Shown here piece after piece: positions 1-56,607 of a stretch of 59,332 nucleotides of DNA. The stretch is from Octopus bimaculoides. Its lineage: Eukaryota. A model generated the notes under the pieces. The model made no database searches, was not told where the DNA came from, and saw only the letters and a program-made list of their open reading frames with translations. The stretch covers positions 92,800,841 through 92,860,172 of the forward strand of contig NC_068983.1 in assembly GCF_001194135.2 (NCBI RefSeq), in the 5' to 3' direction. Each line of letters begins with the position of its first letter. Position 1 is the first letter of the stretch. Both the position numbers and the translations under genes were made by a program.

Positions 1-213
1 AAAAATATTCAGACAAATACATAACAAAAACACCAGGACTTACAAATATATATAACATACAGAAAATTGCACTACTGGGTACTGCACACATTCTACGCAA
101 AACACTTTCAATACAGTAAACATAAGAGCACCACAGCAAACCACAGCACATACCCAAGGCGCACAGAGCTGCGCTCGGTAGTGAAGTGAAAGCACGTTAT
201 AAAAATAAAACTA

Positions 214-247
<34 letters not shown>

Positions 248-250
248 TCA
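1..250 (+). mobile_element. 3' end of an R4/Dong-like (restriction-like endonuclease) non-LTR retrotransposon with (AAT)n tail
   Basis: Frame 3-119 reads KYSDKYITKTPGLTNIYNIQKIALLGTAHILRKTLSIQ*, resembling the recalled C-terminus of REL-endonuclease LINEs. It is followed by a short 3' UTR and an (AAT)n tract at ~219-246. Confidence 0.7.
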
Positions 251-300
251 TCATCAAAAAATACCTTAGGAATGAGAACCCAAGTTCAAAATTTCCCCAA

Positions 301-341
301 GACACCTGATGAAGGCTGGAGGGTATATCAGCTGAAACGTA
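301..341 (+). ncRNA. Minimal hammerhead-ribozyme-like core, probably a degenerate Penelope-like element relic
   Basis: CTGATGA (306-312), stem II GGCTG(314-318)/CAGCT(329-333), GAAA (334-337), then palindromic ACGT and a GTA triplet. The stem I partner for upstream GACAC is missing. Confidence 0.45.
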
Positions 342-390
342 TTAACAACAGATGAGGACAAATATCTGTCAAATGTAAATAATTCTACAA

Positions 391-760
391 CGATGTTTTG
401 AAGCATTTGAGGAAGGTCATTCTGCAAAAGTGACTGGATCTGTGAAGCGCAAAGAATTGTATTCTACATGATAATGCACCATCACCAAGCTCTCCTCACT
501 CATGAGTTTCTTGCCAAAAACTACATGGTATTGCTTCTGCACCTGCTCTATTTTATTGTTGAGATCAAGAGCAAATCACAGAACGTCCTCGATTCACTTA
601 CAGAAAACAACTTCCAGGCCAGATTCCAAAAGTGGCAGGAATACTGGGACCAGTGTATTGCTGCTCAAATGACTATTTCGTAGGAGATGATGTTAAAACT
701 TAGGTAAATAAGTTATTATTTATTAGGCATAACTTGTTCAGGAACTCTTTGATACCACCT

Positions 761-764
<4 letters not shown>
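391..764 (+). mobile_element. Mariner transposon, 3' fragment
   Basis: Degenerate ILHDNAP and FQARFQKWQEYWDQCI segments, colinear with the 25276-26202 copy. Right TIR aacttgttcaggaactctttgataccacct at 731-760. Confidence 0.85.
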
Positions 765-792
<28 letters not shown>

Positions 793-795
<3 letters not shown>

Positions 796-1190
796 AAGTT
801 GTAGACTCAGGAAGACACAGGATGAAGTACTGAAGGACAACCTCAGGATGCTGAACCTTTTGGGCAAGATGACAAACAATCAAGATGCCTGGCGCCTTAC
901 TGAACTCAAGAAGACCTGTGTTTTGCAGCAAAAGTGCTAATGCCAGTCCCCCCCCCCCCNNNNNNNNNNNNNNNNNNNNNNNNNNNNNNNNNNNNNNNNN
1001 NNNNNNTGTTTAAGAGGATTGGACTGCAAGAGTCCTGTGTTGGTGTCACATAAAAAGCACTCGTGCTGGTGCCACATCAAAGTGCTTGTGCAGTGTCACA
1101 TAAAAACACTCAGCATGCTCTGTAAAGTGGTTTGCTTTAAGGGCTTCCAGCCATAGAAACCATGCCAAATCAGACTAGAGCCTGGTGCTT
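793..1190 (+). mobile_element. RTE-clade LINE 3' end (ORF C-terminus plus 3' UTR), interrupted by a gap
   Basis: GSCRLRKTQDEVLKDNLRMLNLLGKMTNNQDAWR resembles the GRGRPRKTWDEV...DRDLWR terminus seen at 15095-15367. The 3' UTR motif ccagccatagaaaccatgcc follows. Confidence 0.65.
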
Positions 1191-1644
1191 GAAATTATAA
1201 TACTTAACACCTGTTTATTCCATTCTAACATCTGAGATTGATATGAAATAATCATCATCATCATCATCATCATCATTTAACATTTGTTTTCCATGCTGGC
1301 ATCGATTGAATGGTTTGACAGGAGCTTGTGTACCAAAAGACTGTGCCAAGCTCTACTGTCCACTTTGTACTGGGTGCTTTTTATAATGGTAATAAAAATG
1401 ATCTTTTCTCTTGTCTTCTTGATGAGAATAAATCAATCTGAGACTCTAGATTTGATAAATGAAATACCAGAAATGTAACGAATTTGACTTCTATTGTACC
1501 TTCCTCTAGAAATGTTATGACTATATAAGGAAATACAGTCTGTATTATAGTAGAAGAGTGTTTGACTTCACAAACTTAAAAAGAAAAAACATGTAAGTTT
1601 TCAAAATTTTCTATAATTTTCTACTTGGCATTTTTTTTTAACAG

Positions 1645-2891
1645 TATACTGTGATCTTCGAATGAAAGAAAATGTCTTAAGATGGAAGGATTTCAGTCTT
1701 GTGGTTATTGATGAAGTCCACCATTCAGACAAAGAACATCCATTCAGAAAACTTTTGAAGGAAGAGCACCATACTTTAGAAGAGACAGATTGTCCCCAAT
1801 TACTAGGACTAACTGCCTCACCTGCTGGGAAGGAAACTATTCCAAAAACTATTACGATGCTTCAAACGTTGGTAACTAATTTAAACAATTCGAAAATTAA
1901 CATTGTGAAAGAGGAAGTAAAAGAGCTAATGAAGTATAAATCTTCTGCTCAGTTAAAAATCTGCACTGTTCCTTTCCAAGATGCTGAGTTACCATATATA
2001 GCTGAGTTTAAAAAATATCTTTTAGAATGTTTGAAAGTTCTTGTGGACTATTTTGATCTTTCACAATACATAATACCATCATCTGAGGATTTAATTGACA
2101 AAAGCTTTCTGAATGAAATTGAGGAAAGATTAAGGTCTGTAACCATCATTGGAGAAATGGAAAAAGGGACAATCTTAATTAATCACACTAAAGAAATTGT
2201 TTCCCTTATTATAGATGCTCTCGATGGAGGAATTTCTTGTATAGTTGAAGAACTAAAATTTCTTTCTGATCCTTCAAATATGAAATATTCATTTACACTT
2301 GCTTCTGGAACTGGTCTTTGTTGTGATAACATCAGATCAGTAGTTAACACAATTGTAGTGAGCTATAATATCCCTATTTCAGCACAGTTTAACTATCTTG
2401 TAAAAACTATTGGTGAATACATAACTGATGATCGTGATATTCTATCTGGACTCATATTAGTAATGGTGAAGAGAAGGAGAACTGCTGTTGAACTTTGCAA
2501 GATGATGAAGACTTCACCATTGGTTAATGAGAAACTCTCTGTTGTTAGTATCACTGGTCATGGTGGTGGTGGTGGTGATGGAATGAAAGTAAGTTCACAG
2601 AGGAAGGTATTTCAGGAAATAAAAGAAGGTAAACATCAAATTATTATTACGACTTCTGTAGCTGAAGAAGGTGTTGATTTACCAAAGTGCTCTCTAGTGA
2701 TAACACTGAATCCACCAACTTCAGTTATAACTCTGGTGCAAATGCGAGGCCGAGCACGGAAAAACAATAGCATATTTTTGGTTGTCTGTGAAAATACGAA
2801 GAATGAAGAAAACATTAGGAATCTGTTAAGTGCTGAAAGAATAATGGAAGATGCTACAGAGTATATGTGTAATAAGGAAAGGTCACCCTAG
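1645..2891 (+). CDS. RIG-I-like receptor/Hef-type SF2 DExH helicase, large exon (motif II to VI with Hel2i insertion); upstream exons lie outside the window
   Basis: Acceptor tttttttttaacag at 1631-1644 (phase 1). Motif II VVIDEVHH, motif III LLGLTASP, ~215-aa spacer, motif IV LVMVKRRRTA, ITGHG...QRKVF, motif V TTSVAEEGVDLPKC, motif VI QMRGRARK. Uninterrupted 409-aa ORF with stop at 2889-2891. Confidence 0.9.
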
Positions 2892-3171
2892 ATATTCTAA
2901 TGTGATTTAATTGAAAAAAAATGTTCTATTCTTATTAAATCTATTTTCCTTCATTCTTAGTTATTTTATATATTTTTCAAATATTTTCAGCATTTCACAC
3001 ATATACACACACATTCATCAATATTTAAAAGAGGATGGTTTCTGTTTTACATGCTAAATATAACATTTTCAGACAGAGTTTTTAGAAATAAAACATGGGA
3101 TAACTTTGGGGATCAAGTGATCTAATTTTGTGAGAAATGAAGTTGTTCAAGGTATAATGAAAATTGGTCAA

Positions 3172-3403
3172 ACAAAATGTTGGGTCAAGCTCAAAGAGCC
3201 TTAACTATAACTCTGTAAACCTCACTGCGCATTAGAAAAACTGATATTTTACCATTTTTTGATTTCCATTAACTTCCTTAAACTTGGTTAAAATTGCATA
3301 TACTTTTATGTTAAAATATTCATTTATTTTCATGTAAGTTTTATAGCATAATAATTAATTATTATAATGATAATAAAATATTTTTAACCTTATTTACTCA
3401 AGA
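3172..3403 (+). repeat. Local duplicated segment; second copy at 4290-4428 plus 5869-5991, split by a LINE
   Basis: aaaatgttgggtcaagctcaaa...aaattgcatatactttt...gttaaaatattcatt...ttatagcataata...tactcaag is colinear with 4290-4428 joined to 5869-5991. Confidence 0.8.
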
Positions 3404-4428
3404 ACTTCATTATATTCACATTTCACTTGGCTCTATTTTTACTCTTCTTCTTTCTGTTTGTTTACTCTCTCTCCTACTTATTCCTATATATGTCTGTCTC
3501 TCCCTGTCTCTTCTGTTTGATTTTCTCTCTCCCACTCTTCCTCTTTCTATGTTTTACTTTCTTTTCAACTTATTCTCCTTCCCTTTCTTGTCAATTCTGT
3601 ATCAATTCTCCTGTCTATCTGAATCCTCCCCTCTCTCTATATATCTATCTTTCTGTCTGTCTGTCTCTTTTTTTTCATTCGCGTTTCCTTCTAACACTCT
3701 TCCTCCTCCTACTATTGTAACTTCCTCCTCTATCTTCTGAACATGGTTTACTACCCTTTCTTTCCAGTTTGCTCTGCCTATTCCTCTCTATCTCACAACA
3801 CTAGAGAAGTTAAACTGCCCACTGGGTCATGTCTTCTCTCTGGTTGAGTCTTGTCTTTTCTTTCCGGTGACCATTGCCTGGTCAAATTTAATTAACACCA
3901 TGTCCGAATTCTCATTAATTCATCAAATTAATACTTTTCTTCCTTTTCACTGTGCTCATGGGTAACCTGAATAGCATGAACAGAGGGAAGTACAGGTGTT
4001 ATGTGAGACAATGCGGTTGCTTGACCTGTTAGAAATAGCAGCCAAATTGCCCTCAAATCACTTCCTACTGCCTCTTAGAAAAGATGCATTTGATAATGTA
4101 TTTCTAGACATATTGTATCAGAAATACAGAATGGCTGGTCAAGCTGAAACATCCTGCTAGCTCAGGAGTGGTCTGGGGCTAAATAATCAGATATGTTTTA
4201 TGTCCAAAGTAATGTCTATATTTATGCAACACATATATATTAAGCTCAAGTTAAATGATTGTATTGGTCAAGCACATTTAGTGCTTGACCCAACAAAATG
4301 TTGGGTGAAACTCAAATGAATCTTGACTATAATTCTGTAACCTTGTTGCATATTAGAAATATCGATTTCTTTTTTGTTTAATTCTTTAATTTCCATTTGC
4401 TTTCTTCAACTTAGTTGAAATTGCATAT

Positions 4429-5868
4429 CATCATCATCATCATCATCATCGTTTAACGTCCGTTTTCCATGCTAGCATGGGTTGGACGATTTGACTAAGG
4501 ACTGGTGAACCAGATGGCTACACCAGGCTCCACTCTGATTTGTCAGAGTTTCTACAGCTGGATTCCCTTCCTAACGCCAACCACTCCGAGAGTGTAGTGG
4601 GTGCTTTTACGTGCCACCGTCACGAAGGTCAGTCAGGAGGTACTGGCAATGGCCACGCTCAAAATGGTGTATTTTACGTGCCACCTGCACAGGAGCCAGT
4701 CCAGCAGTACTGGTAATGAACTCGGTCGAATGTCTTTTCACGTGCCAGGAGGGTGACGTTGGTAACGATCACGCTCAAATGGTGCTATTTATGTGCCCCT
4801 GGCACGGAAGCCAGACAGCTGGTGCTCAGGCAACGATCACGCTTGGACAGTGCTCTTAGTGATCTACTGGTGCCATCATAATTTTGCTTTCGCTTGCCCC
4901 AACAGGTCTTCGCAAACCGAGTTTAGTGTTGAATGAAGAGACGTTGGTATGGGTGCCAGTCTACAAATTTAGTTCGATTTCGATTTCACTTGCCTCAACA
5001 GGTCTTCGCAAGCGGAGTTTAGTGTCCAAAGAAGGAATATTACGCGTAAGTGGGCTGGCTACATCCCAGGCAGAGGCCTTGGATTTTGATCTCACTTGGC
5101 TTGCTGGGTCTTCTCATGCACAGCATATTTCCAAAGGTCTCGGTCAGAAGTCATTGCCTCAGTGAGGCCTAATGTTCGGAGGTCGTGCNNNNNNNNNNNN
5201 NNNNNNNNNNNNNNNNNNNNNNNNNNNNNNNNNNNNNNNNNNNNNNNNNNNNNNNNNNNNNNNNNNNNNNNNNNNNNNNNNNNNNNNNNNNNNNNNNNNN
5301 NNNNNNNNNNNNNNNNNNNNNNNNNNNNNNNNNNNNNNNNNNNNNNNNNNNNNNNNNNNNNNNNNNNNNNNNNNNNNNNNNNNNNNNNNNNNNNNNNNNN
5401 NNNNNNNNNNNNNNNNNNNNNNNNNNNNNNNNNNNNNNNNNNNNCGGAGCATACTGACTTCATTCCTTGCGAGCTTACGCATGTCCTCAGCAGTCACAGC
5501 CCATGTTTCACTGCCATGTAGCATGGCTGTTTGTACACATGCGTCATACAGTCTGCCTTTTACTCTGAGTGAGAGGCTCTTTGTCGCCAGCAGAGGTAAG
5601 AGCTCTCTGAACTTTGCCCAGGCTATTCTTATTCTAGTAGCTACACTTTCAGCGCACCCACCCCCACTACTAACTTGGTCACCCAGATAGCGGAAGCTAT
5701 CAACTACTTCTAGTTTTTCTCCCTGGAATGAGACAGAAGTTGTTTCCTGTTTGTTTACAGTGTTTATTGCACCTGAACATCTGCCACATACAAAAACTAA
5801 CTTGTTTCCTGCACATTTTCAGTGTTTACCCTGGAATGTGACAGAAGTTGTTTCCTGCACATTTTCAG
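4429..5868 (-). mobile_element. 5'-truncated RTE LINE with (GAT)n tail and 7-bp TSD TGCATAT
   Basis: (CAT)n at 4429-4450 on +. Long 3' UTR with internal repeats. Minus-strand peptides MLHGSETWAVTAEDMRKLARNEVSML and HDLRTLGLTEAMTSDRDLWKYAV. TGCATAT at 4422-4428 and 5869-5875. N gap at 5189-5444. Confidence 0.85.
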
Positions 5869-6539
5869 TGCATATACTTTGTTAAAATATTCATTGTATT
5901 TATAACCTTTATTTTCATATAAGTTCTATAGCATAATATAATGATTAATTATCATAATAATAAATGAAATCTTTTTAACATTATCTACTCAAGCAAGCCA
6001 AGTGAGACCTAAATCTAAGGCCTCAGCCAGTCCACTTATGCGTACCTTCCTTCATTGCACACTAAACTCCACTTGTGAAGACCTGTTCAGGCAAGTGAAA
6101 TCGAAATCGAGTTAAACTCGACGACTGGAATGATCGAATGAAGAGAAAAGGAAGAGGAAGAAGAGTAAAGGAAAAGAAGAGGAGAGAGAAGAAACATGAA
6201 AGAGAGATAGGTCTGGGAAGAAGGATGATGACCCAGATGAAGAGAAAGGATTGAAAATGGAATGGAGGAGAGAAAAGAAAGAGGAAGAGTTTATTATTAA
6301 AACTATTGTTTTTAAAAAGTGCAACAAAATGACCAATTTTTTGTTATTTTCTTGAAAGTTTGACATTTTTCTGTAAAACAGGAAATTTTTTCGATTTAAA
6401 TACTATATATAATTGAAGAAATAATGATGACTGTGTCACATACTTCATTCCCAGTTTTAAGGCTGTCTAATACATCAGGTAGTACAATGGATAGTTCCAA
6501 GTACCTGCAAAAGTAGAAGACCTAGATCTACTTGGCAGA

Positions 6540-13465: not shown

Positions 13466-14156
13466 TGTGGTGGTTGTCTACTCCATTAAACAGAGTTTGA
13501 CCACCTCCTGCACCTACACCTTAGCCCTTTCANNNNNNNNNNNNNNNNNNNNNNNNNNNNNNNNNNNNNNNNNNNNNNNNNNNNNNNNNNNNNNNNNNNN
13601 NNNNNNNNNNNNNNNNNNNNNNNNNNNNNNNNTAGATAGATAGATAGATACATTGATTGATAGATAATTACGCAATGAAGTATAGAATGTGACCCTCTTG
13701 AGTGCGGGGCCTGATTGGGAGCAATCGGTCCAATCGGTTTATGGCCATCCCTGACAGTAGTGAACTGTAATCTACTGAGTAGGCTGACCAGCTAGTGTTT
13801 AGGGTTGCGAAACAACAATGACTGAATGCAAAAACAATAGCAGTGTGGACGGTTGGTGAATATCTTGCAAAACTCTCCCTCTATGACCTATAACTTGATT
13901 ATATTGAAGAAAAAATATGTCAGGGCTCAATGAAACCAATGATTTGATATTTACCAGCTTGATAAAGATCACAAAACTAAACAACTTGACAGCTGATCTT
14001 TTATATAATTTTTTAAGGCTTATTGGGAGTTAAATAGTGAATGAAATTTCAATTGAATATTTAGGAAAGTGCAAAGTCAACATAACAATTAATGAATGGT
14101 GAGGCGACTTACATGTTTGATCCAATTTTTACATTTTGTTGTCCATAACACACAAA

Positions 14157-15659: not shown

Positions 15660-16200
15660 AACATAAGCTTTGTATGTGACAAATGTACAAGAGCAGTATG
15701 TACTATGAATACAGCAAAAATAAATGCTCTTGAATGCCAGGATGGTTCACTGTAAGTAGTTGATAGATTTTGTTACCTAGATGATGTAATTAGCAAGGGA
15801 GGTGGCTACTCTGAAAGTATAGCAGTCAGAGTAAGAACAGGGTGCAGAAAGGTTAGGAAGCTATTACCATTGTTGGCAACAAAGGTATTTTTCCATAGAT
15901 TGTATGACACTTGTGTTGGAACTGCAATGCTATATGATGGTGAGACATAGGCCTTGTAAGCAGAGGACTTGAGAAGATTGCAAGATTGAATGAACAACAT
16001 AGTATAAATGTGCTGAGAGAAAAACAGCATAAGGGGAGTCAGTTGCAGTTTGTAAGAAAGAAGATTGCAATGACATGGATATGTAATATATATATGGAAG
16101 ATGAAGACCTAGAAAAACATGGGATAAAATTGTAAGGCTGATCTCAGGACCCTGAACCTCATGGAGAAGATGAGAAAGGACCAGAATGTCTGGCAATATG
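15660..16200 (+). mobile_element. Older RTE reverse-transcriptase C-terminal fragment
   Basis: Degenerate VVDRFCYLDDVISKGGGYSESIAVRVRTG...LLPLLATK...TAMLYDGET; homologous to 5500-5700 and 55600-55800. Confidence 0.7.
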
Positions 16201-16914
16201 AGGATCTCAAGAAAATCTGCCCACCTTTGTGAAACTGACTCCTATATGCACTGTTTGCATGTATAAGTACATATAGACACCTTGTCCAGTNNNNNNNNNN
16301 AAATTGTAAGGCTGATCTCAGGACCCTGAACCTCATGGAGAAGATGAGAAAGGACCAGAATGTCTGGCAATATGAGGATCTCAAGAAAATCTGCCCACCT
16401 TTGTGAAACTGACTCCTATATGCACTGTTTGCATGTATAAGTACATATAGACACCTTGTCCAGTAATTTCTCTCATTGTGACTACCCCCTCTCCACACAC
16501 CAAGATAATTGTACTTTCTTGATACCTTGAACTGTTTTACTTGTTAGTCTTTCGTCATCCATTAAGCATTGTTCTTGCCCACATTAGTGATTCATCTCTC
16601 TCACGAAATTATCTCCTCTCATGCACTATACCTGCCTCTCTCCCCATCTCAACCACATGTCATCACTTTCTTGTTTTCCCTGTTAACTGTATTACTATCC
16701 TGCTGCTCTTCCCCACTCTCTTCTATACTCCTCTACCTTCCCCAACTCATGCATCATTGGTCATCCATTACTCCCAATACTTTTCAATCCCGATCTTTAA
16801 AGTTGTTACCTACCTCCTATTTGCTCACATCTCTTGCTCACCCATAAATTCTTGCAAAATCCTATCCCAACACACTTCTACACATCTCGTACATTGAGAA
16901 AACATCTGGACTGA

Positions 16915-21332: not shown

Positions 21333-24043
21333 TACTTAACTATATACTAAATTCTTCATAGAATTTTCAACAATTCTCATCTTACCTACATAATAGTAGT
21401 GTCTTGCATATGTAATATAGTGAGTTGAAGTACTTTTATGAACTGAGATTATCCATGGAGTTATGATAATAATTAACTTATTGCACAACAACTCACCAGA
21501 AAAGGTAGCCAAAAGTGCATGTACAGTACAAAGAATATTGCACAGAAAGCAAACAGTAAATGAATAATTTAAAATAAAGTTGGGGGTGGATGGCATCAGG
21601 TGTACTATCTGAATTTTGGGAAGCATGGAAGTTTTGAAGGATGTAGTATCCCAAAAGCTAATAACCAATGCAGGTGGTCTATTCCATACTTCAGCAATTC
21701 TGAACATGAAAAATTGTTTTTGCAAGTCATTATCTATAGTTGAAACCTAAAAAATCCATAGAAGAAGAAAAAATCTTGCCTGTTTAAGCTTTGACCAAAA
21801 GGTAGTAATTGAATGAAAGTTTCATACCTGTGCACAAGTATAGCTAAAAGAAAGTAAGGTGTGGTGGGATGTCAGTCCAAGACAGCATTTTTGGTGGGGT
21901 AGAACTATATATATGCAGTCAAATGACAAACATGTAAAAGAATAAAAGAATATCTTTAATTTTACAAACCAATTCATAGGTAGTACAATGTAATAGCAGG
22001 AGGGTTACCAGTGTCTCAACACTGCTTGACAACTGGTGTTGGTTTGTTTATGTCCCTGTAACGTATAAATTTGGCAAAAGAGACTGATAGAGACCAAGCT
22101 AAGAAAAAAAGAAAAGTACTGAGGCTGATCCATTTGATTAAAAATTCTTCAAAGTAGTGCCCCAGCAAGGCCATAGTCTAATGACTGAAACAAGTAAAAG
22201 ATAAAAAAAAAAAGACTACTACCTTAGAACATCAGCTTGTGATCTCTGTAATTACCCCCAAGTAGTGAATCTTCTCTGTTCTTACAACAGTTTACAAGAT
22301 TACAATAACAGTTATTAAAGAGGTAACATTTTCCTAAATTACAGCTTAACTAAATGATTATGAGCCAGCCAACTGGAAAGTTTTTGCACAGTCAATTGAA
22401 TAGATAAAAATAACAGCTAAATTTTCCTGAAGTCATTTCATTAGGATATATTGAATTATATAGACTAAAGTATACTATTTCTGAATAAAAAAACAGTATG
22501 GTCATTACTGTAATGTCCTTGGCCTGCTTGCTCAGAACGAACTTGGTGTTAAAAAATGGCAGCAATAATGAATAAATGACTAATAATTTTAAATGAGTTA
22601 ATATAACATACATTTTTTTTTGTTTTGATCACAACCAACTGAACATGTTCATATCTTGAATTATTGTAGAGCTACCATGTTTGTAAACTGAAACAAAATG
22701 ATCAATAATGAGCAATAACAACAAACAATGAAATTTCTTGTATAAAATATAAAAATTTATTTTCAAAATTCAAACTAATTGAGAAGGTTGCAATACAGCT
22801 CATTTTCTTTGCTGTTGATCAGATTTGCAGGTGAATACATCTACAGTAAAAAATATTTTGGAAGCAGAATTAGAAAACTTCAGTCCATAACATTGTGATA
22901 TGATCTTTCCACTTTGTTCAGTTGAAGTAAGAAAAAAAAATGTGTAGATGGAGAAACCAGCAGAAATGAATATATTTACATTAGGGGATAAATTGTCTTT
23001 TAAAATAAGGAAAATAATACAAAATCAGAAGATAATGTAGAAAAAAAAAAGATTTCATTAAAATAATAAAAAAATATTGACTTTATACACACATACACAC
23101 ACTTGTTTTATAATAAAATAGCTTCAAAAGGTGTGACATTTTAAACACTTCACATATATATANNNNNNNNNNNNNNNNNNNNNNNNNNNNNNNNNNNNNN
23201 NNNNNNNNNNNNNNNNNNNNNNNNNNNNNNNNNNNNNNNNNNNNNNNNNNNNNNNNNNNNNNNNNNNNNNNATATATATATATATATATATATATAAATG
23301 AAAATATGCCTGTAAATATTTATTTATAGAATGCCACTACCTTACATCAACTGTGGTGTTCGTTCATCCTAACTAATTAAACACTAAAATAAAAGGGATA
23401 TCTACAGATATTATGATAGAATCAAAGAATTCCTCATAGATTAACAAAGTAAAAAATTGTGAAAAGAAATTTGTTTATAAGAAAAGAAAACTAAAAATTC
23501 ATGGAATTGGCACGGCAGTGTAAAATAATGTGGGAATTTATTAGATAATCTCAAAGATTAGTTCTTAAACCAATTAAGCATTAACTTTGGAACTAAAAAA
23601 AATATTTTCTTTTTAGCTTTTTTTTCTTTTTTTTCATTTTCTTCTGTTGTTAAAGGAGATATTTTGCAAGTTCCTGATATAAAATAGATCAGCAGAACAT
23701 GAAGAGGGAGGCTTCTTTGTTAGATTTCATTAAGACAATATTTATTATTTCTAGTTCTTATAATTTGTATATTCAAACATACATGTATGCTTCTTTATGC
23801 ATGAGTGCACACATGCATACTTGATAGTATGCAGATGCATACCTATGTAAGTGTGTATGTGAGCAGCTGTGTTTGTATGCGAGTAGTGTATATTCATGAT
23901 GTCTATGAAATGTATAAATGCCTGTTTCATATGATATATCACATCAAAGACATGTGATGAAAGGCGGTGTTAAATCCCATTTCACTGTTATTCCTAAACT
24001 GTTCCGCAACCCAATGCAGATTTGTGTGAAATCTTGTGAAATT

Positions 24044-47677: not shown

Positions 47678-49391
47678 NNNNNNNNNNNNNNNNNNNNNNN
47701 NNNNNNNNNNNNNNNNNNNNNNNNNNNNNNNNNNNNNNNNNNNNNNNNNNNNNNNNNNNNNNNNNNNNNNNNNNNNNNNNNNNNNNNNNNNNNNNNNNNN
47801 NNNNNNNNNNNNNNNNNNNNNNNNNNNNNNNNNNNNNNNNNNNNNNNNNNNNNNNNNNNNNNNNNNNNNNNNNNNNNNNNNNNNNNNNNNNNNNNNNNNN
47901 NNNNNNNNNNNNNNNNNNNNNNNNNNNNNNNNNNNNNNNNNNNNNNNNNNNNNNNNNNNNNNNNNNNNNNNNNNNNNNNNNNNNNNNNNNNNNNNNNNNN
48001 NNNNNNNNNNNNNNNNNNNNNNNNNNNNNNNNNNNNNNNNNNNNNNNNNNNNNNNNNNNNNNNNNNNNNNNNNNNNNNNNNNNNNNNNNNNNNNNNNNNN
48101 NNNNNNNNNNNNNNNNNNNNNNNNNNNNNNNNNNNNNNNNNNNNNNNNNNNNNNNNNNNNNNNNNNNNNNNNNNNNNNNNNNNNNNNNNNNNNNNNNNNN
48201 NNNNNNNNNNNNNNNNNNNNATATATATATATATATATATATACAGTGAGTGACGACCCTGCCTGACACGAGTCCCAGGCTCAGCTGGCTCTGGCTGACA
48301 GTACTCAGTATGGGCCCCTGTCCAGGGTTGCAGAAAGGAGACAACCTTCAAAGAAATCCAGAGTGGAGCCCCATAGGCAGCTTAGTGTTCGACTCAACAC
48401 TCTTCCAGCAGCGCCTGCAACCAAGCTGGCGCCAAACGTAATGCTCTGCACTCCTTTGGACTACGTCACCAAAATTGAGACAGGAATCCTGACGATTGGG
48501 CTACCCAGGATTTTCTTACATCTAGCCCAGGCCTGTGCAAAACTGGAGAGGACATGAAATGTAAAAACCAGACTGGATTAGTTTATGTGCAACTCCATTG
48601 TCTCCCAAGACAAAAGGATGCCAACAACAATATATATACATACACACACACATGGCATGGTTTCTATGGCTGGATGTCCTTCCTAGATCAACCATTTTAC
48701 AGTATGTAATAGGTACTGCACATACACACACACTGTAAATAGTTCCTTTGTTGGCTTTGATCAGCAAAGCTTAGGTTATAATTCTACTACAATAGAATTA
48801 ATCATCACTATCAAAAAAAACAAAAAAACATCAAGACCCCTAAGATGATGAACACTACCTAGTGGTAGATTAGAAATTATAACTCATTAGCACTTGGCTT
48901 TCCTTCTCTATGTTACTTCTATCAGTCATGAAAATAATCTGATAAAAGCTATCACCTTCCTAAATAAGACAAAGAAGTGGTGAGGTTAATCAGGAAAACT
49001 CACTTCATTCAACACCTTTTCTTTCTTACATTAACAAACCTGGAAACTCCCTTCCTGCAACCCAATTTTTTTTCACAATAACAACAGTTCTTTATAACTC
49101 AATTTCATTTGCAAAATAGTCTACACAGTTATTCCATATGTCACATTCAAAATATGTGATATTCTCCCCTATTTCTTTAGTGTATATATTTCATATACTA
49201 AGACATTTTAGAGTGCTTTACACTGAGTATACACATCTTTCACAGATAATTATGATTTTAGCAAACAAATGGGAAAACAACAAAACCAAAAATTTTGACA
49301 AGCTCTCTAACAATTTTTTTTTGTTTTAAAACATTATTGTGTAAAGGTAATAATACCTGGTTGTTGTTGCAGAGTTAGTGATATTTCAATC

Positions 49392-56527: not shown

Positions 56528-56607
56528 AGTGACTCTAGGTTATCAGCATCACTTGGGCTTATAGTAGATTTCACATAAGACACATGCCTGCTCGAAGNNN
56601 NNNNNNN

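What the first reader, a model, noticed from the sequence alone, without database searches (positions are those of the whole stretch)
1645..2891. RIG-I-like helicase whose reading frame stops before the C-terminal RNA-sensing domain
Seen: an intact 1.25-kb exon with motifs II-VI and a Hel2i-sized insertion, with a stop only ~45 aa after QMRGRAR. Established: RIG-I/MDA5/LGP2 continue through a two-helix pincer into a Zn-binding CTD, Dicer continues into DUF283/PAZ, and Hef/FANCM have long C-termini. Inference: this may be a CTD-less invertebrate RLR-like sensor with a different ligand-recognition mode, identity set by unseen N-terminal exons. The loop before motif IVa carries a (GGT)5-encoded poly-Gly.
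Basis: partly seen in the sequence, partly recalled or inferred. Interest (0 to 1): 0.75.

Follow-up and report, generated by a model that had tools for sequence, protein, structure and literature searches.

The report
Zinc-finger Dicer-type helicase, naturally tail-less
This is the last exon of an expressed octopus gene for a Dicer/RIG-I-type RNA helicase that really does end without a C-terminal RNA-sensing domain; it carries zinc fingers of a double-stranded-RNA-binding type at its front end instead, and it belongs to an old animal protein family that I could not find described in the papers searched.

Summary
Window 1645-2891 is one intact coding exon with helicase motifs II to VI, a Hel2i-type helical insert and a (GGT)5 poly-Gly loop. 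The stop lies 43 aa after QMRGRAR.

RNA-seq shows the stop is real. Coverage starts at 1645 and runs through the stop with no splice joints. Transcript contigs carry poly(A) after 2953 and 3390.

The window is Octopus bimaculoides. RefSeq (LOC128246994) splits the gene at a 10-N assembly gap. Upstream exons outside the window encode two zf-met (U1/JAZ-type) zinc fingers fused in one ORF to the Q motif and Walker A. There is no CARD or death domain. The reconstructed protein is about 720 aa.

The same layout holds across molluscs, crinoids, a flatworm and corals: 1-13 zinc fingers, a helicase, then an end 39-56 aa after motif VI. All are annotated as uncharacterised or misnamed. A coral member also has a Z-alpha domain.

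In neighbour-joining trees the family is a clade (89%). It groups with amoebozoan HelF-type dsRBD-helicases (86%) on the Dicer side (70%), outside the RLR clade (82%).

Best reading: a dsRNA-dependent ATPase that uses N-terminal zinc fingers instead of a CTD. It is not an RLR-type signalling receptor. The function is inferred, not tested.

The parts
1631..1644 (+). 3' end of the last intron: polypyrimidine tract (T9) and AG acceptor
   Evidence: Sequence. RNA-seq depth is 0 at 1492-1635 and rises at about 1645. The X10 transcript contig joins '...LSMHDVIISTA' of the previous exon to this point.
1645..2888 (+). Coding part of the terminal exon (coding exon 4 of 4): second half of Hel1, Hel2i-type insert, Hel2 and the C-terminal helix; 414 aa plus a split codon
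   Evidence: Translation. 100% identical to P0001/LOC128246994 residues 84-499. Pfam Helicase_C 3.6e-16. AF2 pLDDT 85.3.
1710..1721 (+). Motif II, DEVH (DEAH in most relatives, DECH in RLRs and Dicers)
   Evidence: D, E and H invariant in the family alignment.
1812..1823 (+). Motif III, TASP, within the invariant LGLTASPAG
1989..2429 (+). All-helical insertion domain (Hel2i-type), aa 115-261 of the exon product
   Evidence: AF2 secondary structure. The same domain is seen in the Pinctada ortholog model. Foldseek top hits are RLR and Dicer helicases. Three non-synonymous polymorphisms lie here.
2451..2789 (+). Hel2 RecA-like domain (motifs IV to VI), aa 269-381
   Evidence: Pfam Helicase_C covers aa 268-370. 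AF2.
2562..2576 (+). (GGT)5 encoding G306-G310 in the conserved 'GHG...GM' loop before motif IVa
   Evidence: Relatives have Gly/Ser-rich loops of similar length here, for example GHGGGSGEGGGM. This block has lower pLDDT (69) in the model.
2739..2759 (+). Motif VI, QMRGRAR
   Evidence: invariant.
2796..2882 (+). Single long C-terminal helix (aa 384-412), in the position of the first pincer helix of RLRs and Dicers; nothing follows it
   Evidence: AF2. The Pinctada model has the same helix at 580-610. The motif 'RE.NM..A' is conserved in the family.
2889..2891 (+). Stop codon TAG
   Evidence: RNA-seq runs through it without any joint. Relatives stop at the same alignment position.
2892..2953 (+). 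Short 3' UTR up to the proximal poly(A) site (ATTAAA at 2934)
   Evidence: The X10 contig ends in an A18 run after 2953. Signal position.
2892..3390 (+). Long 3' UTR up to the distal poly(A) site (AATAAA at 3372)
   Evidence: The X10 contig covering 2924-3390 is followed by poly(A). Raw-read depth fades between 3220 and 3360. Signal position.

Best explanation
**What it is.** Window 1645-2891 is the last coding exon of a single-copy, expressed Octopus bimaculoides gene. Its true product is about 720 aa, laid out as follows:
- two N-terminal C-x2-C-x12-H-x5-H zinc fingers of the zf-met/U1/JAZ class, a finger type that binds double-stranded RNA in JAZ/ZNF346;
- a 35-aa linker;
- a complete Dicer/RLR-type helicase core (Q motif, Walker A, DEVH, TASP, QMRGRAR) with a Hel2i-type helical insert;
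- one terminal helix, then the stop.

It has no RIG-I CTD, CARD, PAZ, DUF283 or RNase III, and this is the native state. RefSeq splits the gene in two because a 10-N assembly gap sits inside coding exon 2.

**Family.** The gene belongs to an old animal family (molluscs, crinoids, a flatworm, corals) that always couples 1-13 such zinc fingers to this helicase and always ends about 40-55 aa after motif VI.

**Proposed mechanism (inferred, not shown).**
- The zinc fingers dock the protein on the stem of long dsRNA.
- The helicase core then acts as a duplex-RNA-stimulated ATPase/translocase.
- With no end-capping CTD, it should read duplex stems rather than 5'-triphosphate or blunt ends.
- With no CARD, it should not signal through MAVS. 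It more likely works inside RNA-silencing or dsRNA-processing machinery, as a helper or regulator. Dictyostelium HelF (dsRBD plus helicase, modulates RNAi) and C. elegans DRH-1 (assists Dicer) are precedents.
For: **Shown**
- Exon anatomy and motifs.
- Transcript evidence: sharp start at 1645, no joints, poly(A) after 2953 and 3390.
- Upstream exons found by tblastn in the 10-kb-flank locus L001. Exon 1 is one ORF holding both fingers plus 'PRGYQVEL...FLPTG'. Exon 2 holds 'TGTGKT', the N gap, then 'RRPVLFIVDKV'.
- Pfam zf-met scores 28.7 bits, above its cutoff of 21.2.
- The Argonauta hians 787-aa protein is collinear over both fingers, the gap and the end, at 61% identity.
- Haliotis and Pinctada have a full finger in frame just before the annotated start.
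- Long relatives carry 4-11 zf-met hits, and four of the seven scanned also exceed the cutoff for zf-C2H2_jaz, with the helicase at the extreme C-terminus.
- The last finger lies 29-42 aa before the Q motif in 15 of 16 members.
- Taxon spread.
- Z-alpha is above the Pfam cutoff in the coral member and in P0221.
- AF2 and Foldseek give the RLR/Dicer helicase fold with a single terminal helix.
- NJ tree: family 89%, with HelF-like 86%, Dicer side 70%, RLR clade 82%.

**From the literature**
- HelF is Q86L44, with a dsRBD plus helicase. Its knockout makes cells hypersensitive to RNAi (PMC4894637, PMC2175303).
- DRH-1 assists Dicer (PMC11095941).
- Molluscs lack Dicer-2 (PMC11114477).
Against: - No biochemical or genetic datum exists for any member. 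ATPase activity, RNA binding and pathway are all inferred from homology and domain association.
- The octopus fingers reach only the general zf-met threshold. The dsRNA-specific jaz model scores 16.4 bits, below its cutoff of 22.6.
They rest on orthology, on the ORF content of exon 1 and on the 2231-nt transcript contig length.
- The trees are neighbour-joining only, and deep nodes are moderate (70-86%).
- The coral member has a degenerate motif VI, so not all members need be active ATPases.
Confidence: 0.7

Rival explanations
1. A CTD-less RIG-I-like receptor: an innate immune sensor of the RLR lineage that lost its CTD and signals to an interferon-like pathway through N-terminal adaptor domains.
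For: Sequence and fold matches to MDA5, RIG-I and LGP2 are as strong as those to Dicers among solved structures. Molluscs have RLR/MAVS pathways (PMC5557890).
Against: - The N-terminus has zinc fingers, not CARD or death domains.
- The family never groups with RLRs in 200 bootstraps, and the RLR clade excludes it at 82%.
- Family-profile scores are higher for HelF-like proteins (260-290 bits), helicase-RdRP fusions and Dicer-like proteins than for RLRs (123-196 bits).
- No relative has a CTD.
Confidence: 0.08
2. A HelF-like nuclear brake on RNA interference: the same protein as in the best explanation, but its role is to sequester or unwind dsRNA and so dampen silencing, not to promote defence.
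For: The family groups with amoebozoan HelF-type dsRBD-helicases (86%). helF deletion makes Dictyostelium hypersensitive to RNAi (PMC2175303). JAZ-type finger proteins are largely nuclear (my own knowledge, not tested here).
Against: The shared ancestry is old and the RNA-binding modules differ (dsRBD against zinc fingers). The Z-alpha domain in the coral member and in P0221 is typical of immune and editing proteins (my own knowledge). There are no localisation data.
Confidence: 0.15
3. A broken or truncated gene, or an annotation or assembly artefact: a helicase fragment whose C-terminal domain was lost by decay or lies in an unassembled region.
For: The assembly has N gaps nearby (960-1006, 5189-5444). 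The RefSeq model is indeed wrong at its 5' end.
Against: - The transcript is polyadenylated just after the stop.
- The stop is at the same alignment position in cephalopods, gastropods, bivalves, crinoids, a flatworm and corals.
- All helicase motifs are intact.
- It is expressed in more than 20 runs.
Confidence: 0.02
4. A detached Dicer helicase: the helicase domain of a Dicer gene split off from its PAZ/RNase III part, which is encoded elsewhere and works with it as a two-piece Dicer.
For: The family lies on the Dicer side of the tree (70%). In Dictyostelium, Dicers lack the helicase and separate proteins carry it (PMC4894637). RefSeq names such as 'dicer-like protein 1' appear.
Against: - The family is not inside the RNase III-bearing Dicer clade.
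- Metazoan Dicers score only 123-189 bits against the family profile.
- Lophotrochozoan DICER1 proteins mostly keep all their domains, helicase included (PMC11114477).
- The family also occurs in cnidarians (corals), and cnidarian Dicers in the tree retain a helicase core.
Confidence: 0.04
5. A FANCM/Hef-type DNA translocase acting in replication-fork repair.
For: FANCM and Hef appear among distant hits.
Against: They give the lowest scores (FANCM 94 bits, Hef 137 bits, against 147-213 for Dicers and RLRs). Hef is the outgroup, and the ingroup is separated from it at 100%. There is no ERCC4 or HhH domain.
Confidence: 0.01

Closest known systems
Dictyostelium discoideum HelF (Q86L44, DDB_G0294407) and HelF-like amoebozoan dsRBD-helicases
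   Same: Nearest helicase cores outside the family (family-profile scores 200-292 bits; grouped at 86% NJ bootstrap). Same logic of architecture: dsRNA-binding module(s) plus a Dicer-type helicase, with no RNase III, PAZ or RIG-I CTD.
   Different: HelF uses a classical dsRBD (PF00035), not zinc fingers, and has about 90-115 aa after the helicase core. It comes from a different eukaryotic supergroup. Only about 27-28% identity over trimmed columns. Its role as an RNAi suppressor (PMC2175303) is untested for the animal family.
RIG-I-like receptors (RIG-I, MDA5, LGP2; C. elegans DRH-1/DRH-3)
   Same: Hel1-Hel2i-Hel2 fold, with a helix leaving Hel2. Foldseek E-values 1e-26 to 1e-23, TM 0.55-0.62. 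Profile scores 137-177 bits.
   Different: No Zn-binding CTD, no second pincer helix, no CARDs. Outside the RLR clade. Motif II is DE[AV]H rather than DECH.
Dicer helicase domain (animal Dicer-1/Dicer-2, plant DCLs, reconstructed AncD1D2)
   Same: The best single PDB sequence match is the ancestral animal Dicer helicase AncD1D2 (213 bits). The family lies on the Dicer side of the RLR/Dicer split (70%).
   Different: No DUF283, PAZ, RNase III or dsRBD. Not nested in the RNase III-bearing clade. Has N-terminal zinc fingers.
JAZ/ZNF346-type and zf-met zinc-finger proteins
   Same: C-x2-C-x12-H-x5-H fingers. Pfam zf-met is above its cutoff in Octopus. zf-C2H2_jaz is far above its cutoff in long relatives (116-130 bits).
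   Different: Those proteins are finger arrays without an enzyme. Here the array is fused at a fixed 29-42 aa distance to a helicase Q motif.

Membership tests
Duplex-RNA-activated ATPases (Dicer/RLR-type SF2 helicases) | Two RecA-like domains with motifs Q, I, II, III and VI | tested here: met
   PRGYQVEL, GTGKT, DEVH, TASP and QMRGRAR are present in the reconstructed protein. Pfam DEAD/ResIII/Helicase_C hit in full-length relatives.
Duplex-RNA-activated ATPases (Dicer/RLR-type SF2 helicases) | All-helical Hel2i insertion between Hel1 and Hel2 | tested here: met
   AF2 models with pLDDT 84-85 show helical inserts at aa 276-448 (Pinctada) and 115-261 (octopus exon). Foldseek top 50 hits are RLR, DRH and Dicer helicases.
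Duplex-RNA-activated ATPases (Dicer/RLR-type SF2 helicases) | ATPase stimulated by double-stranded RNA | not testable with these tools
   Needs purified protein.
RIG-I-like receptors | C-terminal Zn-binding RNA-recognition domain (Pfam RIG-I_C-RD, PF11648) | tested here: not met
   - No Pfam hit.
- The ORF ends 43 aa after motif VI.
- Poly(A) follows right after the stop.
- tblastn with an RLR that has a CTD finds nothing downstream in the window.
- A home-made CTD HMM hits only true RLRs.
RIG-I-like receptors | V-shaped two-helix pincer linking Hel2 back to Hel1 | tested here: not met
   Only one helix (29-31 aa) follows Hel2 in both models.
RIG-I-like receptors | N-terminal tandem CARDs (RIG-I and MDA5 only) | tested here: not met
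   Exon 1 product: zf-met only, no CARD or Death hit at E<=1.
RIG-I-like receptors | Helicase core nested in the RLR clade | tested here: not met
   The RLR clade (bird and shrew RIG-I, oyster MDA5-like, hemichordate DHX58-like and others) has 82% support and excludes the family. Family plus RLR: 0 of 200 bootstraps. NJ only.
Dicer | DUF283/Dicer_dimer, PAZ and two RNase III domains after the helicase | tested here: not met
   None in the protein. The transcript ends after the helicase.
Dicer | Helicase core nested among RNase III-bearing Dicers | tested here: not met
   The family plus HelF-like plus helicase-RdRP group (84%) is sister to the Dicer group. Together they have 70% support.
HelF-like helicases (Amoebozoa) | Helicase core closest to HelF | tested here: met
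   86% NJ support for family plus HelF-like. Highest non-family profile scores.
HelF-like helicases (Amoebozoa) | Classical dsRBD (PF00035) as the RNA-binding module | tested here: not met
   No dsrm hit in any scanned family member, only zf-met/jaz. HelF-likes have dsrm.
FANCM/Hef | ERCC4-type nuclease or HhH domains; closest helicase similarity | tested here: not met
   No such domains. Lowest scores. Outgroup in the trees.
zf-met / JAZ-type zinc fingers | C-x2-C-x12-H-x5-H finger matching Pfam PF12874 above its cutoff | tested here: met
   28.7 bits against a cutoff of 21.2, two stretches (aa 10-33 and about 128-150).
zf-met / JAZ-type zinc fingers | Binding of A-form double-stranded RNA | not testable with these tools
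   The octopus fingers score 16.4 bits on the jaz model, below its cutoff of 22.6. Relatives score 116-130 bits.

The most novel reading that the evidence does not exclude
Animals have a third, ancient lineage of Dicer/RLR-type dsRNA helicases beside Dicer and the RLRs. It recognises RNA through N-terminal arrays of dsRNA-binding zinc fingers (plus a Z-alpha domain in a coral member) instead of a C-terminal domain. It is kept in cnidarians, flatworms, molluscs and crinoids, and it did not turn up in vertebrates, arthropods or nematodes in these searches. It may act as a so-far unrecognised dsRNA/Z-RNA surveillance or silencing factor. For example, in lineages without Dicer-2 it could supply in trans the ATP-driven helicase activity that their Dicer-1 no longer provides.
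Probability: 0.35. Interest if true: 0.8.

Novelty: new variant of a known kind. Interest (0 to 1): 0.6.

Why it matters
Work on how animals sense double-stranded RNA has focused on two helicase lineages, Dicer and the RIG-I-like receptors. Both pair the helicase with C-terminal RNA-handling domains.

This gene shows a third, conserved solution. The same kind of motor is fused to N-terminal zinc fingers of a dsRNA-binding type and ends right after the motor. It is present from corals to cephalopods.

These are lineages where antiviral RNA sensing is poorly understood: molluscs lack Dicer-2, and heterobranchs and abalone lack MAVS (PMC11114477, PMC9334734, PMC11103948). The family therefore gives a concrete, testable candidate for dsRNA handling in them.

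It also links animal helicases to amoebozoan HelF, which bears on how the Dicer/RLR helicase family arose.

On the practical side, it corrects a split RefSeq gene model. It also flags names such as 'dicer-like protein 1' and 'DHX58-like' as misleading.

Tried and rejected
1. **Downstream CTD or Dicer exons in the window.** tblastn with an RLR that carries a CTD, and with orthologs, found nothing beyond 2888. RNA-seq then made the question moot.
2. **Laying reads on the upstream locus L001** to see the exon 1-2-3 joints and fill the N gap. I relied on orthologs, exon 1 ORF content and the length of the transcript contig instead.
3. **First RNA-seq pass over 1-6000** was swamped by repeats and microsatellites. 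Narrowing to 1420-3560 at 97% likeness gave a clean picture.
4. **Discriminating RLR from Dicer by PDB sequence scores or Foldseek** failed. Both are about equally close. Only trees with many sequences separated them. The first 128-sequence tree had an unresolved backbone, so I rebuilt it with named RLRs and Dicers.
5. **The original HelF paper (PMC1360742)** is not held. HelF facts come from PMC2175303 and PMC4894637.
6. **Literature searches** for the family, its domain pair and its accessions found nothing. One search was badly phrased and useless.
No coding DNA of a close relative could be fetched under the tool rules.
8. **The second profile search** did not widen the taxon list beyond crinoids and molluscs, because of the word-candidate cap.
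9. **Pseudogene, Dicer fragment and FANCM readings** were considered and rejected. See the rival explanations.
Full report
**1. The observation**

The window is AT-rich eukaryotic DNA with N gaps. At 1631-1644 there is a T-rich tract ending in AG. From 1645 an open frame runs to TAG at 2889-2891.
- The 414-aa product carries DEVH (motif II), TASP (III), a Gly-rich loop 'GHGGGGGDGM' whose five glycines are encoded by (GGT)5 at 2562-2576, and QMRGRAR (VI). It ends 43 aa after motif VI.
- The longest stop-free run in the window is 424 codons. In 100 shuffles the mean was 132 and the maximum 174.
- Pfam finds Helicase_C (3.6e-16) and the tail of DEAD/ResIII.
- The closest solved structures by sequence are Dicer, LGP2, RIG-I and MDA5 helicases, then DRH, Hef and FANCM.

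**2. Is the stop the true end?**

Three raw-read RNA-seq runs and one set of transcript contigs from the same species were laid on 1420-3560.
- Depth is 0 at 1492-1635, rises at about 1645, stays at 5-35 per orientation through the stop, and fades between 3220 and 3360.
- No splice joint was found anywhere in the stretch.
- One 2231-nt contig covers 1642-2953 and continues upstream with '...TATCAATGCATGATGTTATTATCAGTACAG', which encodes ...LSMHDVIIST. This is the previous exon.
- Contigs carry poly(A) after 2953 (ATTAAA at 2934) and after 3390 (AATAAA at 3372).

The mRNA therefore ends 62 nt or about 500 nt after the stop. No CTD, PAZ or RNase III exon is spliced on. tblastn with a CTD-bearing RLR also finds nothing downstream in the window.

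**3. Whose gene is it, and what are the unseen exons?**

The exon is 100% identical to residues 84-499 of 'uncharacterized protein LOC128246994 [Octopus bimaculoides]'. The locus with 10-kb flanks (L001; window 1645 = L001 38338) was fetched. tblastn with mollusc relatives shows that the real gene starts further upstream than the RefSeq model.
- **Exon 1 (L001 4650-5280)** is a single ORF encoding two C-x2-C-x12-H-x5-H fingers (CDLC...H...H and CTLC...H...H). A 35-aa linker follows, then the helicase Q motif 'PRGYQVEL' and 'FLPTG'.
- **Exon 2 (16193-16313)** encodes 'TGTGKT', then a 10-N assembly gap, then 'RRPVLFIVDKV...'.
- **Exon 3 (21846-21970)** ends '...VIISTA'.
- **Exon 4** is the window exon.

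The annotation pipeline broke the gene at the gap. It called a 239-aa upstream 'gene' and gave the helicase model a spurious first exon (MVVYDHSEIDFR).

The reconstruction gives 707 aa with four X residues. The independent 787-aa protein of another octopod, Argonauta hians, is collinear with it over both fingers, across the gap (about 15 residues are missing in Octopus) and to the same end. It is 61% identical over the helicase. Pfam scores exon 1 as zf-met at 28.7 bits (cutoff 21.2, two stretches). No CARD or death domain appears.

**4. A family, not a one-off**

Mollusc relatives found first (Haliotis, Pinctada, Mya, Mytilus and unnamed contigs) all stop 37-45 aa after QMRGRARK. Their annotated starts lie inside a zinc finger. 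In Haliotis rubra and Pinctada the in-frame upstream DNA completes it ('YYCDTCNRPMNTEKDYQAHLESRAH'). Pinctada also has a 700-aa ORF with several zf-met-type fingers just upstream.

A profile search of 1.84 billion representatives gave 1102 hits below 1e-30.
- The top hits are long proteins with the helicase at the extreme C-terminus.
- They carry 1-13 fingers by pattern and a 39-56 aa tail after motif VI.
- Examples are Haliotis asinina (1841 aa, 11 zf-met stretches, zf-C2H2_jaz 128.9 bits), Mercenaria, Potamilus, Argopecten, Mactra, Lottia (V4BFR5), Bulinus, Babylonia, Nucella and Dreissena.
- Outside molluscs, the same layout occurs in the crinoids Anneissia and Antedon (named 'Dicer homolog 3a-like' and 'DHX58-like'), the flatworm Macrostomum and the corals Montipora.
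- The last finger sits 29-42 aa before the Q motif in 15 of 16 members checked.
- The coral protein and one unnamed member also have a Z-alpha domain above the Pfam cutoff (38.6 and 41.5 bits, cutoff 21).

None of these proteins has a functional name. Eight literature searches found no paper on the family or its accessions.

**5. Where it sits among helicases**

After the family itself, the best profile scores go in this order:
- amoebozoan dsRBD-helicases, including Dictyostelium HelF (Q86L44), at 200-292 bits;
- helicase-RdRP fusions, at 190-270 bits;
- Dicer-like proteins, at 123-224 bits;
- RLRs, at 123-196 bits;
- Hef, at 104-134 bits.

Among solved structures, the reconstructed ancestral animal Dicer helicase scores 213 bits. 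MDA5, RIG-I and LGP2 score 160-177, plant DCL1 156, human Dicer 147, DRH and Hef about 137, fly Dicer-2 112 and FANCM 94.

A first NJ tree of 128 cores gave the family 84% and an unresolved backbone. A curated tree was then built from 76 cores and 491 columns with 200 bootstraps, rooted on archaeal Hef. It included named RIG-I, oyster MDA5-like, hemichordate DHX58-like, and cnidarian, vertebrate, arthropod, plant and fungal Dicers. It gave:
- family 89%, and molluscs within it 100%;
- family plus HelF-like 86%;
- plus helicase-RdRP 84%;
- plus Dicers 70%, excluding RLRs;
- RLR clade 82%;
- family plus RLR 0%.

These are distance trees, so the deep nodes should be rechecked with likelihood methods.

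**6. Structure**

AlphaFold2 of the Pinctada ortholog (pLDDT 84.2, pTM 0.78) and of the octopus exon product (85.3, 0.82) give the same picture: Hel1, an all-helical insert, Hel2, then one long terminal helix (aa 580-610 and 384-412). Nothing follows that helix. Foldseek against the PDB returns MDA5, LGP2, RIG-I, DRH-1, the ancestral Dicer helicase and DCL4 at E 1e-26 to 1e-22 and TM 0.55-0.62. The fold is that of the duplex-RNA-activated ATPases. The terminal helix corresponds to only the first arm of the RLR pincer.

**7. How it most likely works**

Shown:
- a complete set of ATPase motifs;
- the Hel2i-type insert;
- a fixed fusion to zf-met/JAZ-type fingers;
- the absence of CTD, CARD, PAZ and RNase III;
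- expression and polyadenylation.

Inferred from established knowledge of JAZ/ZNF346 fingers and of RLR and Dicer helicases:
- The fingers bind the stem of dsRNA.
- The core is a dsRNA-stimulated ATPase/translocase.
- Lacking a CTD, it should not read 5'-triphosphate or blunt ends.
- Lacking CARDs, it should not signal through MAVS.
- The number of fingers (2 in octopods, 8-13 in many bivalves and gastropods) could tune avidity for long duplexes.

There are two precedents for a stand-alone helicase of this kind:
- Dictyostelium HelF, whose loss makes cells hypersensitive to RNAi (PMC2175303, PMC4894637);
- C. elegans DRH-1, which supplies helicase activity to Dicer (PMC11095941).

Molluscs lack Dicer-2 (PMC11114477), and some mollusc Dicers have degenerate ATPase motifs (PMC10159624). 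A trans-acting helper is therefore plausible, but a brake is equally possible. Z-alpha in the coral member points to dsRNA/Z-RNA biology.

I put 0.9 on the anatomy and family assignment and about 0.5 on the mechanism, 0.7 overall.

**8. Verdict**

- Right: the protein is CTD-less, and the N-terminal exons do set a different recognition mode.
- Wrong: it is not an RLR. It is a member of a separate, old and apparently undescribed branch nearest to HelF-type and Dicer-type helicases.
- Novelty: a new variant of a known kind.
- Interest: 0.6.

Noticed in passing
L001 16208-16217 (outside the window, about 22 kb upstream of window position 1): A 10-N assembly gap lies inside coding exon 2, right after the Walker A motif. 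As a result RefSeq splits one gene into a 239-aa 'zf-met' gene and LOC128246994, which has a spurious first exon (MVVYDHSEIDFR). About 15 codons are missing compared with Argonauta.
   Followed up: yes
window 2053, 2176, 2193: Three variants (T>C, T>C, G>A) are seen in about 20-50% of reads in runs X21 and X22 but not in X23. All three are non-synonymous (F136S, L177S, E183K) and all lie in the Hel2i-type insert. No synonymous variant passed the filter. They look like a haplotype, not A-to-I editing.
   Followed up: partly
window 4400-4800 and 5445-5800: Stretches with RNA-seq depth of 300-1600 per orientation, against 5-35 for the gene, and many fixed differences. These are probably members of an abundant, transcribed repeat family (SINE-like). 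A>G and T>C are the commonest kinds of difference across 1-6000.
   Followed up: no
window 218-246, 765-795, 1250-1276: Microsatellites (TAA)n, (TG)n and (TCA)n attract very many partly matching reads and false 'joints'. The (GGT)5 in the exon likewise draws opposite-strand chimeric matches at 2560.
   Followed up: partly
window 960-1006, 5189-5444, 13533-13632, 16291-16300, 23163-23271, 47678-48220, 56598-56607: Seven runs of N (assembly gaps). Apart from the helicase exon, no ORF of 130 aa or more in the window looks like a gene.
   Followed up: partly
proteins P0097 and P0118 (not in the window): Among distant relatives are proteins with an N-terminal RIG-I C-RD-like domain (weak: 23-25 bits, cutoff 25.6), then a Dicer-type helicase, then RdRP-related domains: an RNA-dependent RNA polymerase domain in P0097 and a fungal-RdRP-associated PH-like domain in P0118. 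P0118 is from the green alga Ostreobium; P0097 is from an unknown ENA contig. This is an odd order of domains.
   Followed up: no
protein P0063 (Montipora corals; not in the window): The coral member has a degenerate motif VI ('QMRARGQ') and a Z-alpha domain at 304-362. It may be an ATPase-dead, Z-nucleic-acid-binding variant of the family.
   Followed up: partly
L003 5193-7295 (Pinctada): A 700-aa single ORF with several zf-met-type fingers lies 0.7 kb upstream of the Pinctada helicase model, whose own start sits inside a finger. This is probably another gene model split from one long zinc-finger-helicase gene.
   Followed up: partly
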